The position numbers and the translations under genes are program-made. A stretch of 64,000 bases of DNA from the NCBI RefSeq assembly GCF_001194135.2, contig NC_068998.1:52723068-52787067 (forward strand), in the 5' to 3' direction. The notes beneath the pieces were generated by a model. That model did not search any database. It saw only the letters and a program-made list of their open reading frames with translations, and was not told where the DNA came from. Source of the DNA: Octopus bimaculoides. Lineage: Eukaryota. Positions 59,072-59,960 of the stretch are shown piece by piece; positions within the stretch are counted from its first letter, which is position 1, and every line of letters begins with the position of its first letter.

Positions 59072-59960
59072 TGCAACATTAACTGCAGCGGCACTAGTAG
59101 CTAGTTTGCAGCATTAGCTGCACCGACATTTAGCTTTCTATCTGCAACACTTTTGCAGATTGACTGAACCAGTTTTTATCTGTGCGCAACATTGGCCGCA
59201 TCGTTCAAGAACCTCTCTTCTTAAAGATGCAAATTTAACAGCATTATTTATGTTACAAATATGCAGCATTAACTGCACCACATATATAATGAGTATGCAA
59301 GAATTTCAATATTTTTACGTTAATCTGCAATACCCTCTGCGTCACTTGCATCGCTTCGTTCTTTTAACTATCCAAAATTAACCAATACCAACTACTAATC
59401 TGCAAAACTAGTTGCACTGAAGTCCGTCAACTTATCTGCAATATTAAGTTTACCATTTTTATATGATTGTCTGAAAGAAATTATTTTAACATGCAACATT
59501 AACTGCAACCCTTCTTCTTATATGCAACATTAACTTCACCATTTTCACCTTAATATGCAGTATTAAGTACTACATCACTGCATCTGTTTAACTATTCAAA
59601 ATTAACTGCATCGCCTTCACATTCATAAGGCTGCAGTATTAACTGCATCATCTGCACCTTCTTAAATATGCAACATTAACTGCACTGTATCACTGTCTTA
59701 AATCTGCAATATTAAGTGCACTACTTGCACCTTTTTACGTATGCAAAATTAACTGCGCCATATTCACCGCCTGAACCATGCAACATTAACTGTGCAACAT
59801 TTACAAGTTCGAATGAGTAAACCTATTTCAGGCATTAACATTAAATGCATCGGCGTGCACAAATCTGCAATGTTAAATACACCAAGTTTACTAACCTGCA
59901 ACGTTCATCAGCCATACAAAATCTGCCACATTTATTACATGCCACATTAATCGGTCCCAA
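59072..59960. repeat. Degenerate minisatellite-like array: 16-bp core TGCA(A/G)(C/T/A)ATTAACTGCA with variable spacers, period mostly 30-45 bp, roughly 22-24 units
   Basis: Exact TGCAACATTAACTGCA at 59072, 59492 and 59669; close variants at 59107, 59228, 59262, 59401, 59437, 59523, 59556, 59595, 59632, 59705, 59742 and 59779. Confidence 0.85.

What the first reader, a model, noticed from the sequence alone, without database searches (positions are those of the whole stretch)
59072..59960. Array of a conserved quasi-palindromic 16-bp core with divergent spacers
Seen: roughly 22-24 copies of TGCA-ACATTAAC-TGCA (TGCA..TTAA..TGCA dyad symmetry), with start-to-start spacings such as 35, 36, 42, 43, 34, 31, 33, 39, 37, 37, 36, 37, 37. 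The core recurs exactly three times across 600 bp, while the ~15-25 nt spacers differ strongly and keep only a faint c..tgcacc..ttaaa residue in the central units. Spacings are mostly not multiples of 3 and the frames examined hit stops, so it does not look like a protein repeat. Inference: a decayed ~37-bp minisatellite should erode roughly evenly, so preferential retention of the core suggests a homotypic protein-binding array. Options include an enhancer for a POU/homeodomain-type factor (ATGCA half-site next to ATTAA; a full ATGCAAAT octamer at 59227), transposase-binding subterminal repeats, or a zinc-finger/chromatin docking site. It lies ~27.5 kb upstream of the tyramine receptor ATG. 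The repeat-spacer layout looks CRISPR-like, but no cas genes are present and the spacers share ancestry.
Basis: partly seen in the sequence, partly recalled or inferred. Interest (0 to 1): 0.7.

Follow-up and report, generated by a model that had tools for sequence, protein, structure and literature searches.

The report
Old octopus minisatellite with protected core
A 900-bp stretch of non-coding octopus DNA holds about 24 head-to-tail copies of a 37-bp unit in which a roughly 16-22-bp block has stayed recognisable while the DNA between blocks has drifted almost to randomness; this is the pattern expected of a row of docking sites for one DNA-binding protein, but nothing here shows that a protein binds.

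Summary
Window 59072-59966 (+) is a degenerate tandem array of about 24 units with a median period of 36-37 bp. All units are in direct orientation. It lies in intergenic DNA of Octopus bimaculoides, 27.6 kb upstream of an intronless aminergic GPCR gene.

The core TGCAACATTAACTGCA has 12 hits at 3 or fewer mismatches, against 1.2 expected by chance. All 12 lie in the array and three are exact.

An anchor-free wrap-around alignment gives 0.80 identity to consensus in the core and 0.63 in the rest; random sequence gives 0.58. Uniform-decay simulations never reached this contrast. Units whose cores differ by 0-1 nt have spacers about as different as shuffled ones. So uneven erosion is supported. 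Which rate is lower in the core, substitutions or indels, is not resolved.

"Quasi-palindromic" is overstated, because only the two TGCA tetramers are symmetric. I found no hairpin covariation, no flanking inverted repeats, no transposase gene, no second array in the window and no coding potential.

Best reading, at about 0.45: a constrained row of recognition sites for a sequence-specific DNA-binding protein. The POU/homeodomain assignment is only a resemblance. Genome-wide copy number and the orthologous locus could not be checked. Interest is modest.

The parts
59072..59966 (+). Whole degenerate tandem array: about 24 units, consensus TGCAACATTAACTGCACCATCTGCACCTTCTTAAATA (37 bp), all in direct orientation
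   Evidence: Maximal-scoring segment of the wrap-around alignment. Unit table and per-position counts. Core hits against chance.
59492..59815 (+). Best-preserved central block: nine units with spacings of 31-39 bp (six of them 36-37 bp). This is the only part where spacers still resemble the consensus.
   Evidence: Steepest rise of the cumulative alignment score, 59500-59800. TRF period-37 call at 59597-59684. Spacer z-scores up to 5.3. Self-BLAST 59485-59682 against 59587-59792, 71% identity.
59072..59491 (+). Left, older part: 11 units whose spacers are at the shuffled level while several cores are intact (16/16, 14/16, 13/16, 15/16)
   Evidence: Per-unit table of core matches and spacer z-scores.
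59834..59966 (+). Right, decayed end: 4-5 units with cores matching 9-12 of 16
59072..59087 (+). Exact copy of the core TGCAACATTAACTGCA at the outermost left unit, next to a spacer unrelated to the consensus
59492..59507 (+). Exact copy of the core
59669..59684 (+). Exact copy of the core
59227..59234 (+). The only full ATGCAAAT octamer, created by a variant unit (TGCAAATTTAACAGCA)
   Evidence: Sequence read directly; core variant listed.
58904..59013 (.). (AC)n then (AT)n microsatellites about 60 bp to the left of the array (a boundary feature, not part of the repeat)
   Evidence: TRF

Best explanation
An old tandem duplication array of a 37-bp unit. A block of about 16-22 bp in each unit, (AAT[A/C])TGCAA-N-ATTAAC-TGCA(-N-C), has been kept by constraint, while the 15-21 bp between blocks drifted freely by substitutions and indels.

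The simplest mechanism is that each block is a recognition site for one sequence-specific DNA-binding protein. The locus would then be a homotypic row of about 20 sites in the same orientation, about 3.5 helical turns apart. It could act as a distal regulatory or architectural element, or be a relic of one.

Shown: the array, its orientation, the uneven conservation, the free position 6, and the absence of hairpin covariation.
Inferred: that the constraint is selection for protein binding, which protein binds, and any link to the GPCR gene 27.6 kb away.
For: - The core is far above chance and strictly co-oriented.
- Anchor-free alignment: core 0.805 against rest 0.628 identity to consensus, with a random baseline of 0.583.
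- Uniform decay failed in 0/400 simulations for each of two star and two tree models, and in 0/200 for each of four models with spacer-only indels at 3-4 per unit.
- Only 18 of 95 alignment indels fall in the core, against about 40% expected.
- Base composition does not explain the difference. G+C is 6/16 in the core and 8/21 in the spacer, and both A/T and G/C positions are better kept in the core.
- The 11 unit pairs whose cores differ by 0-1 nt have a spacer distance of 0.51. Shuffled spacers give 0.566 +/- 0.075. No pair of spacers is closer than 0.30.
- Core and spacer preservation are uncorrelated across units (rho 0.21, p 0.31).
- Substitutions inside the core are unevenly placed: position 6 changed in 11 of 22 units and positions 1-4 and 7-9 in 1-3 units each (dispersion p 0.024). 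This looks like a bipartite recognition sequence.
- Non-coding DNA here is 86-90% identical between O. bimaculoides and O. sinensis. The units therefore diverged well before that species split, yet the cores persist.
Against: - There is no functional evidence of any kind: no chromatin, expression or binding data.
- The orthologous locus and genome-wide copy number could not be examined.
- A model with uniform substitutions, indels barred from the core and 8-12 indels per spacer reproduces the contrast in 14-32% of runs. A lower substitution rate in the core is therefore not proven.
- A first, anchor-based test showed that ascertainment alone gives most of the apparent contrast: 0.16-0.20 simulated against 0.255 observed.
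- In the two clearest sister-unit pairs (families D9 and D15), my hand count of differences is similar in core and spacer.
- The tree-model simulations came close, with a maximum of 0.173 against 0.177 observed.
- The core matches no transcription-factor consensus that I could check.
Confidence: 0.45

Rival explanations
1. Neutral relic minisatellite. The unit arose by slippage or duplication and itself contains three TGCA-led sub-motifs. The array grew by unequal exchange, including multi-unit blocks, and is now decaying. The core looks protected because indels and microhomology-mediated rearrangements concentrate in the CT/AT-rich spacer, and perhaps because short conversion events are possible only within the remaining homology islands. 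No function.
For: - Centre-preserved, edge-decayed gradient typical of tandem arrays.
- Internal block duplications: 59349-59382 with 59573-59606 at 79%, and 59416-59459 with 59502-59545 at 77%.
- Spacer-only heavy indels plus uniform substitution reproduce the statistics reasonably well.
- Microsatellites abut the array.
- Transitions to transversions in the core are an unremarkable 35:28.
Against: - It needs an indel rate at least about 10 times higher in the spacer than in the core.
- It needs more indels than substitutions (about 8 indels against about 4.6 substitutions per spacer), far from usual neutral ratios.
- The spacer consensus is not obviously more slippage-prone than the core.
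- With moderate indel rates the contrast is never reached.
- Three identical 16-mers sit beside unrelated spacers.
Confidence: 0.3
2. The array is the internal or subterminal repeat region of a mobile element, or was carried in by one. The cores would be binding sites kept by selection on the element (for its transposase or a host factor, as in the gypsy insulator). The pattern would then have been inherited at insertion and not maintained at this locus.
For: - Tandem repeats inside transposons are common (PMC8101967).
- About half of coleoid genomes is repeats (PMC8967140).
- A dispersed SINE-like fragment lies 350 bp to the left.
Against: - No inverted repeats flank the array within 4-5 kb (best E-value 0.06).
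- No inverted partner array and no other cluster of cores in 64 kb.
- No ORF of 110 aa or more without assembly gaps within about 5 kb, and no transposase or reverse-transcriptase-sized ORF in the window.
- The SINE-like piece shares nothing with the array.
Confidence: 0.15
3. RNA-level element. The array is transcribed and the repeated block is a protein- or microRNA-binding motif in a long non-coding RNA, built like the Xist A-repeats or a microRNA sponge (comparison from my own knowledge).
For: Only the architecture: a conserved short block, variable spacers, and strict co-orientation.
Against: - No compensatory changes in the only possible stem, TGCA/TGCA. Pairing is 77.3% against 76.7% in shuffles.
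- No Rfam family matches in the array.
- No contiguous 7-8-nt invariant seed, because position 6 is free.
- No transcript evidence is available.
Confidence: 0.05
4. Specifically a POU-domain (octamer or POU-IV/Brn3-type) enhancer for the aminergic receptor gene.
For: ATGCA followed three bases later by ATTAA resembles a bipartite POU site. The published Brn3a reporter oligonucleotide contains TGCATAATTAAT (PMC2829025), which shares 9 of 12 positions with TGCAACATTAAC.
Against: - A full octamer occurs in only one unit.
- The consensus departs from AT(A/T)A(A/T)T(A/T)AT at 2-3 positions, including the last T. That paper says only single differences are tolerated (PMC2829025).
- The strongly conserved second TGCA is not part of any POU site.
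- The distance of 27.6 kb gives no evidence of a link.
Confidence: 0.08

Closest known systems
Degenerate minisatellite or satellite with a conserved box
   Same: Head-to-tail units of 10-100 bp, better kept in the centre than at the edges, internal block duplications, and variability that is not uniform along the unit.
   Different: Here the spacers are nearly saturated while the cores persist. No spacer pair is closer than 0.30, so there has been no recent whole-unit homogenisation. As far as the window shows, it is a single locus.
Gypsy insulator of Drosophila (12 Su(Hw) sites in 340 bp; PMC2374998)
   Same: [quoted passage not shown] The function there depends on the multiplicity of sites for one multi-zinc-finger protein.
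   Different: The gypsy array lies in the 5' UTR of an LTR retroelement, and no such element is visible here. This array has twice as many sites, a longer period (37 against about 28 bp), and a core that does not fit YRYTGCATAYYY beyond TGCA.
Homotypic clusters of transcription-factor sites, and VNTR enhancers such as the MNS16A minisatellite (PMC5438627)
   Same: Many copies of one motif created by tandem duplication, so that copy number sets the number of binding sites.
   Different: The bound factor is known in those cases. Here it is not, and no regulatory activity has been shown.
EBV oriP family of repeats (about 20 copies of a 30-bp unit, each with an EBNA1 site; PMC3218044 and my own knowledge)
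   Same: A regular row of about 20 copies of a roughly 16-18-bp recognition core with AT-rich spacers.
   Different: The EBNA1 site is a true palindrome bound by a dimer and the element is viral. This core is asymmetric, the context is cellular, and the pattern has no match in viral contigs.
Subterminal repeats or foldback arms of DNA transposons
   Same: Multiple short binding motifs spread over several hundred bp.
   Different: No inverted partner arm, no terminal inverted repeats and no transposase gene nearby.
CRISPR array
   Same: A repeat-spacer look.
   Different: Eukaryotic chromosome, a 16-bp imperfect repeat, spacers that share ancestry and vary from 11 to 39 bp, no cas genes.

Membership tests
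Minisatellite (tandem repeat, unit 10-100 bp) | Head-to-tail copies of one unit, contiguous, same orientation | tested here: met
   About 24 consensus traversals over 59072-59966. All core hits are on the + strand. TRF period 37 in the centre.
Minisatellite (tandem repeat, unit 10-100 bp) | Whole units, not only a motif, share ancestry | tested here: met
   Central spacers match the consensus spacer (z up to 5.3). Multi-unit internal duplications at 77-79% identity. Outer spacers are saturated.
Homotypic transcription-factor binding-site cluster | Many copies of one motif within about 1 kb, above chance | tested here: met
   12 hits at 3 or fewer mismatches against 1.17 expected.
Homotypic transcription-factor binding-site cluster | Motif better conserved than the surrounding sequence | tested here: met
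   Contrast of 0.177 never reached under uniform decay. Caveat: an extreme spacer-only indel model does reach it.
Homotypic transcription-factor binding-site cluster | Motif corresponds to a known factor's specificity | tested here: inconclusive
   Only partial resemblance to POU/Brn3 sites (PMC2829025). No motif library was available.
Homotypic transcription-factor binding-site cluster | Occupancy, open chromatin or reporter activity | not testable with these tools
   O. bimaculoides Hi-C and accessibility data exist (bioRxiv 10.1101/2025.08.29.672809) but cannot be queried here.
POU octamer / POU-IV site array | Units carry ATGCAAAT or fit AT(A/T)A(A/T)T(A/T)AT | tested here: not met
   One octamer in about 24 units. 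The consensus AACATTAAC differs at 2-3 positions from the Brn3a consensus (PMC2829025).
DNA-transposon subterminal or foldback repeats | Terminal inverted repeats or an inverted partner array | tested here: not met
   Best flank-to-flank inverted match is 13 nt, E = 0.25. The reverse-complement core shows no cluster anywhere in the window.
DNA-transposon subterminal or foldback repeats | Dispersed copies in the genome | not testable with these tools
   None in the 64-kb window. No cephalopod genome is searchable. 18 ORFs from around the array are absent from the protein collection.
Gypsy-type insulator array | Located in an LTR retroelement and fits the Su(Hw) consensus YRYTGCATAYYY | tested here: not met
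   No retroelement-sized ORFs nearby. The core shares only TGCA with that consensus (PMC2374998).
CRISPR | Near-identical repeats of 23-55 bp, unrelated spacers of constant length, cas genes, prokaryotic host | tested here: not met
   16-bp imperfect core, related spacers of 11-39 bp. The contig is an octopus chromosome (PMC8967140).
Structured RNA repeat | Base pairs supported by compensatory change | tested here: not met
   0 compensatory pairs; pairing equals the shuffled level. No Rfam hit in the array.
Protein-coding repeat | An open frame through the repeats, with period a multiple of 3 | tested here: not met
   Period 37. One forward frame and one reverse frame of the core contain TAA. 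The longest ORF is 73 aa.

The most novel reading that the evidence does not exclude
An ancient array, older than the O. bimaculoides-O. sinensis split, of about 20 phased and co-oriented binding sites. Selection would maintain it as a distal architectural or regulatory element, an insulator or enhancer built like the gypsy Su(Hw) array. The binding factor would be a lineage-specific protein, such as one of the greatly expanded octopus C2H2 zinc-finger proteins or a POU/homeodomain protein, acting near an aminergic receptor gene.
Probability: 0.15. Interest if true: 0.6.

Novelty: new member of a known kind. Interest (0 to 1): 0.35.

Why it matters
If the cores are bound, this would be a clean natural example in a cephalopod of a regulatory or architectural element built by tandem duplication. 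It would also supply a ready-made 22-bp probe for identifying the factor. Almost no cis-regulatory grammar is known in this group. If it is neutral, it shows that a "conserved core with divergent spacers" can arise partly from ascertainment and from indel-prone spacers. That is a useful caution for scans of this kind.

Tried and rejected
1. Anchor-based, ungapped core-versus-flank test. Ascertainment and loss of register alone gave a contrast of 0.16-0.20 against 0.255 observed, so it was not decisive. I replaced it with an anchor-free wrap-around alignment.
2. Looking for relatives. The two-core pattern has 0 hits in viral contigs. Its one hit in metagenome contigs is a chance match inside a bacterial repeat-domain coding sequence, where ...GQTATLTAGGATTYSW... 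repeats.
3. Reaching other copies or orthologues through called ORFs. 18 ORFs in and around the array are not in the protein collection. I judged a homology search with array translations hopeless, because only 5-7 residues per unit would match, and did not run it.
4. The O. sinensis orthologous locus was fetched through the GPCR orthologue, but the 10-kb flank limit stops 17 kb short of the expected array position.
5. Hairpin or cruciform idea for TGCA...TGCA: no covariation.
6. Transposon ends: no terminal inverted repeats.
7. Rfam and tRNA scans gave only microsatellite-driven sub-threshold miRNA matches outside the array.
8. Literal-sequence literature searches for POU-IV sites and for octopus minisatellites returned nothing specific.
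9. No other long minisatellite exists in the window to serve as an empirical control.

Full report
**Context**

The window is part of Octopus bimaculoides chromosome CM046618.1 (assembly GCA_001194135.2). The 444-aa intronless GPCR ORF at 30170-31504 (-) is found on that record, and the accession is the O. bimaculoides assembly (PMC8967140).

- The ORF is a rhodopsin-type receptor: 7tm_1, E = 4e-74.
- Its closest solved relatives are 5-HT1A and alpha-2A adrenergic receptors.
- Its more than 90% identical O. sinensis orthologue is named "probable G-protein coupled receptor No18".
- The finding lies 27.6 kb upstream of its ATG, in gap-rich, microsatellite-rich, 36% G+C non-coding DNA.
- No ORF of 150 aa or more other than the GPCR, gap-spanning artefacts and low-complexity frames exists in the window.

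Yes.

- TGCAACATTAACTGCA has 12 matches at 3 or fewer mismatches, all on the + strand and all between 59072 and 59794. 1.17 are expected by chance, and no shuffle reached 12.
- Three matches are exact: 59072, 59492 and 59669.
- At 5 or fewer mismatches there are 21 copies in the region.
- TRF recognises only 2.4 central copies, which shows how decayed the rest is.
- No frame stays open; the longest ORF in the array is 73 aa.

**Is the core really better kept than the rest?**

*Anchor-based test.* My first test found the most recurrent 16-mer and compared it with its ungapped flanks. It showed the danger. Uniformly decaying simulated arrays put through the same pipeline gave a contrast of 0.16-0.20, against 0.255 observed.

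*Anchor-free test.* I then aligned the whole array to the cyclic consensus with gaps, counted matches per consensus position, and took the best 16-nt window post hoc in both real and simulated data.

- Identity to consensus is 0.805 in the core and 0.628 in the other 21 positions. Random sequence of the same composition gives 0.583.
- The contrast of 0.177 was not reached in 400 simulations of each of four uniform-rate models (two star and two tandem-duplication trees), calibrated to the observed overall identity and indel count. The maxima were 0.122-0.173.
- It was also not reached in 200 simulations of each of four models in which all indels were confined to the spacer at 3-4 per unit.
- Only 18 of 95 alignment indels fall in the core.
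- Base composition does not explain the difference.

*Independent checks.*

- The 11 pairs of units whose cores differ by 0-1 nt have spacers at distance 0.51. Shuffled spacers give 0.566 +/- 0.075.
- No pair of spacers is closer than 0.30.
- The outermost left unit has a perfect core beside a spacer with no similarity to the consensus (z = 0.4).

*Limit of the inference.* If substitutions are uniform (0.22 per site), indels are barred from the core, and indels hit each spacer 8-12 times, the contrast is reached in 14-32% of runs. Such a model gives a spacer-length spread like the observed one. So a large rate difference between core and spacer is established, but not whether it lies in substitutions, in indels or in both. 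That model needs more indels than substitutions and a roughly ten-fold local difference in indel rate, which is itself unusual for neutral DNA.

**Anatomy**

- The conserved block is wider than 16 bp. The most recurrent 16-mer is AAATATGCAACATTAA.
- The information profile reads (A A T A/C) T G C A A n A T T A A C T G C A n C.
- Position 6 of the core is free: C 11, T 7, A 5. The variants are interspersed along the array, not inherited in blocks.
- Positions 1-4 and 7-9 changed in only 1-3 of 22 units (dispersion p = 0.024).
- The core is asymmetric. Only the two TGCA tetramers are self-complementary, the inner octamer has no dyad in that register, and the reverse-complement pattern has no hit in the array at 5 or fewer mismatches. 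All copies therefore point the same way.
- The TGCA pair shows no compensatory change, and pairing is at the shuffled level. I found no support for a hairpin or cruciform constraint.
- The 37-mer itself contains three TGCA-led sub-motifs: TGCAACATTAAC, TGCACCATC and TGCACCTTCTTAAATA. This suggests it was built from a shorter motif (my reading of the consensus).
- The centre (59492-59815) is the best-preserved part and the edges are the most decayed.
- There are internal multi-unit duplications (families D9 and D15).
- The median spacing of 36-37 bp is about 3.5 helical turns. This is arithmetic only and I draw no inference from it.

**Surroundings**

- (AC)n and (AT)n microsatellites end about 60 bp to the left of the array.
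- A 132-nt dispersed, SINE-like fragment at 58596-58727 has an 82% identical copy at 9858-9989. It shares nothing with the array.
- No inverted repeats flank the array.
- There is no second cluster of cores on either strand in 64 kb.
- There are no tRNA genes, and no Rfam match falls in the array.

**Age**

The O. sinensis orthologous GPCR locus was retrieved. Collinear non-coding DNA there is 86-90% identical to O. bimaculoides. Every pair of spacers in the array differs by 30% or more. The unit duplications are therefore older than that species split, if rates are comparable.

An orthologous array is predicted about 27 kb upstream of the O. sinensis gene. It could not be fetched, because flanks are limited to 10 kb and no gene is called in between.

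**Interpretation**

The data fit best with a sequence-specific constraint on the block (confidence about 0.45). The block's length of 16-22 bp, its asymmetry, its free central position and its lack of structure-type covariation are what a recognition site for a DNA-binding protein looks like. The row of about 20 co-oriented sites resembles the gypsy insulator, which has 12 Su(Hw) sites with a YRYTGCATAYYY core and short variable AT-rich spacers in 340 bp (PMC2374998), and VNTR-type regulatory elements (PMC5438627).

Rivals:

- **Neutral minisatellite** whose spacer is unusually prone to indels (0.30).
- **Array carried by a mobile element**, with selection acting on the element (0.15). Tandem repeats inside transposons are common (PMC8101967), but nothing transposon-like is visible here.
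- **RNA-level motif array** (0.05).
- **POU proposal.** This is a resemblance only. One unit in about 24 has a full octamer. The consensus AACATTAAC departs at 2-3 positions from the Brn3a consensus AT(A/T)A(A/T)T(A/T)AT (PMC2829025). The well-conserved second TGCA is not part of any POU site.

No link to the receptor gene is shown.

**What could not be done**

No cephalopod genome, repeat library, motif library, chromatin track or transcript track can be searched with these tools.

- Pattern scans of viral and metagenome collections gave nothing relevant.
- Exact look-ups of 18 neighbouring ORFs found none in the protein collection.

**Verdict**

This is a real and carefully described feature. 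It is an old, single-locus (as far as can be seen) minisatellite with a protected core. It is a new member of a known kind and of modest interest until the orthologue, copy-number and chromatin checks are done.

Noticed in passing
window 58596-58727 and 9858-9989: A dispersed element of about 132 nt, 82% identical between the two places, probably a SINE fragment. It lies 350 bp left of the array and is unrelated to it.
   Followed up: partly
window 30170-31504 (-): The intronless 444-aa aminergic GPCR has 5-HT1A and alpha-2A receptors as its closest solved relatives. Its O. sinensis orthologue is named 'G-protein coupled receptor No18'.
   Followed up: partly
L004 (Logan contig SRR11869390_345940) against window 32560-32957: A contig from a third octopus species, about 90% identical to both O. 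bimaculoides and O. sinensis, is collinear with the genome for 1.1 kb upstream of the GPCR ATG. It then skips about 380 nt, and in the window the break is followed by GTAAAG. This may be a 5'-UTR intron or a deletion. No clear acceptor AG was seen, so it is unresolved.
   Followed up: partly
L002 (SXGT01839387.1), positions 582-634: The only metagenome match to the two-core pattern lies in a bacterial gene made of repeated domains (...CxGQTATLTAGGATTYSWxP...). It is a chance coincidence of ACTGCAACATTAACTGCAGG encoding TATLTAG.
   Followed up: yes
window 19300-20007 (-): A 235-aa ORF with long poly-Asp runs next to (TG)n-type repeats. It looks like a low-complexity artefact and not a gene.
   Followed up: no
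L001 against L003 (O. bimaculoides against O. sinensis, 21 kb around the GPCR): Non-coding flanks are collinear at 82-94% identity. Short dispersed repeats of about 100-150 nt recur several times in the O. sinensis locus (for example L003 16212, 17387, 17800, 18391).
   Followed up: no
window 59326-59400 and 59556-59631; 59416-59459 and 59502-59545: Two-unit blocks inside the array are duplicates of each other (77-79% identity). They share derived core variants such as T(C/T)CAAAATTAAC, which shows growth by multi-unit duplication.
   Followed up: partly
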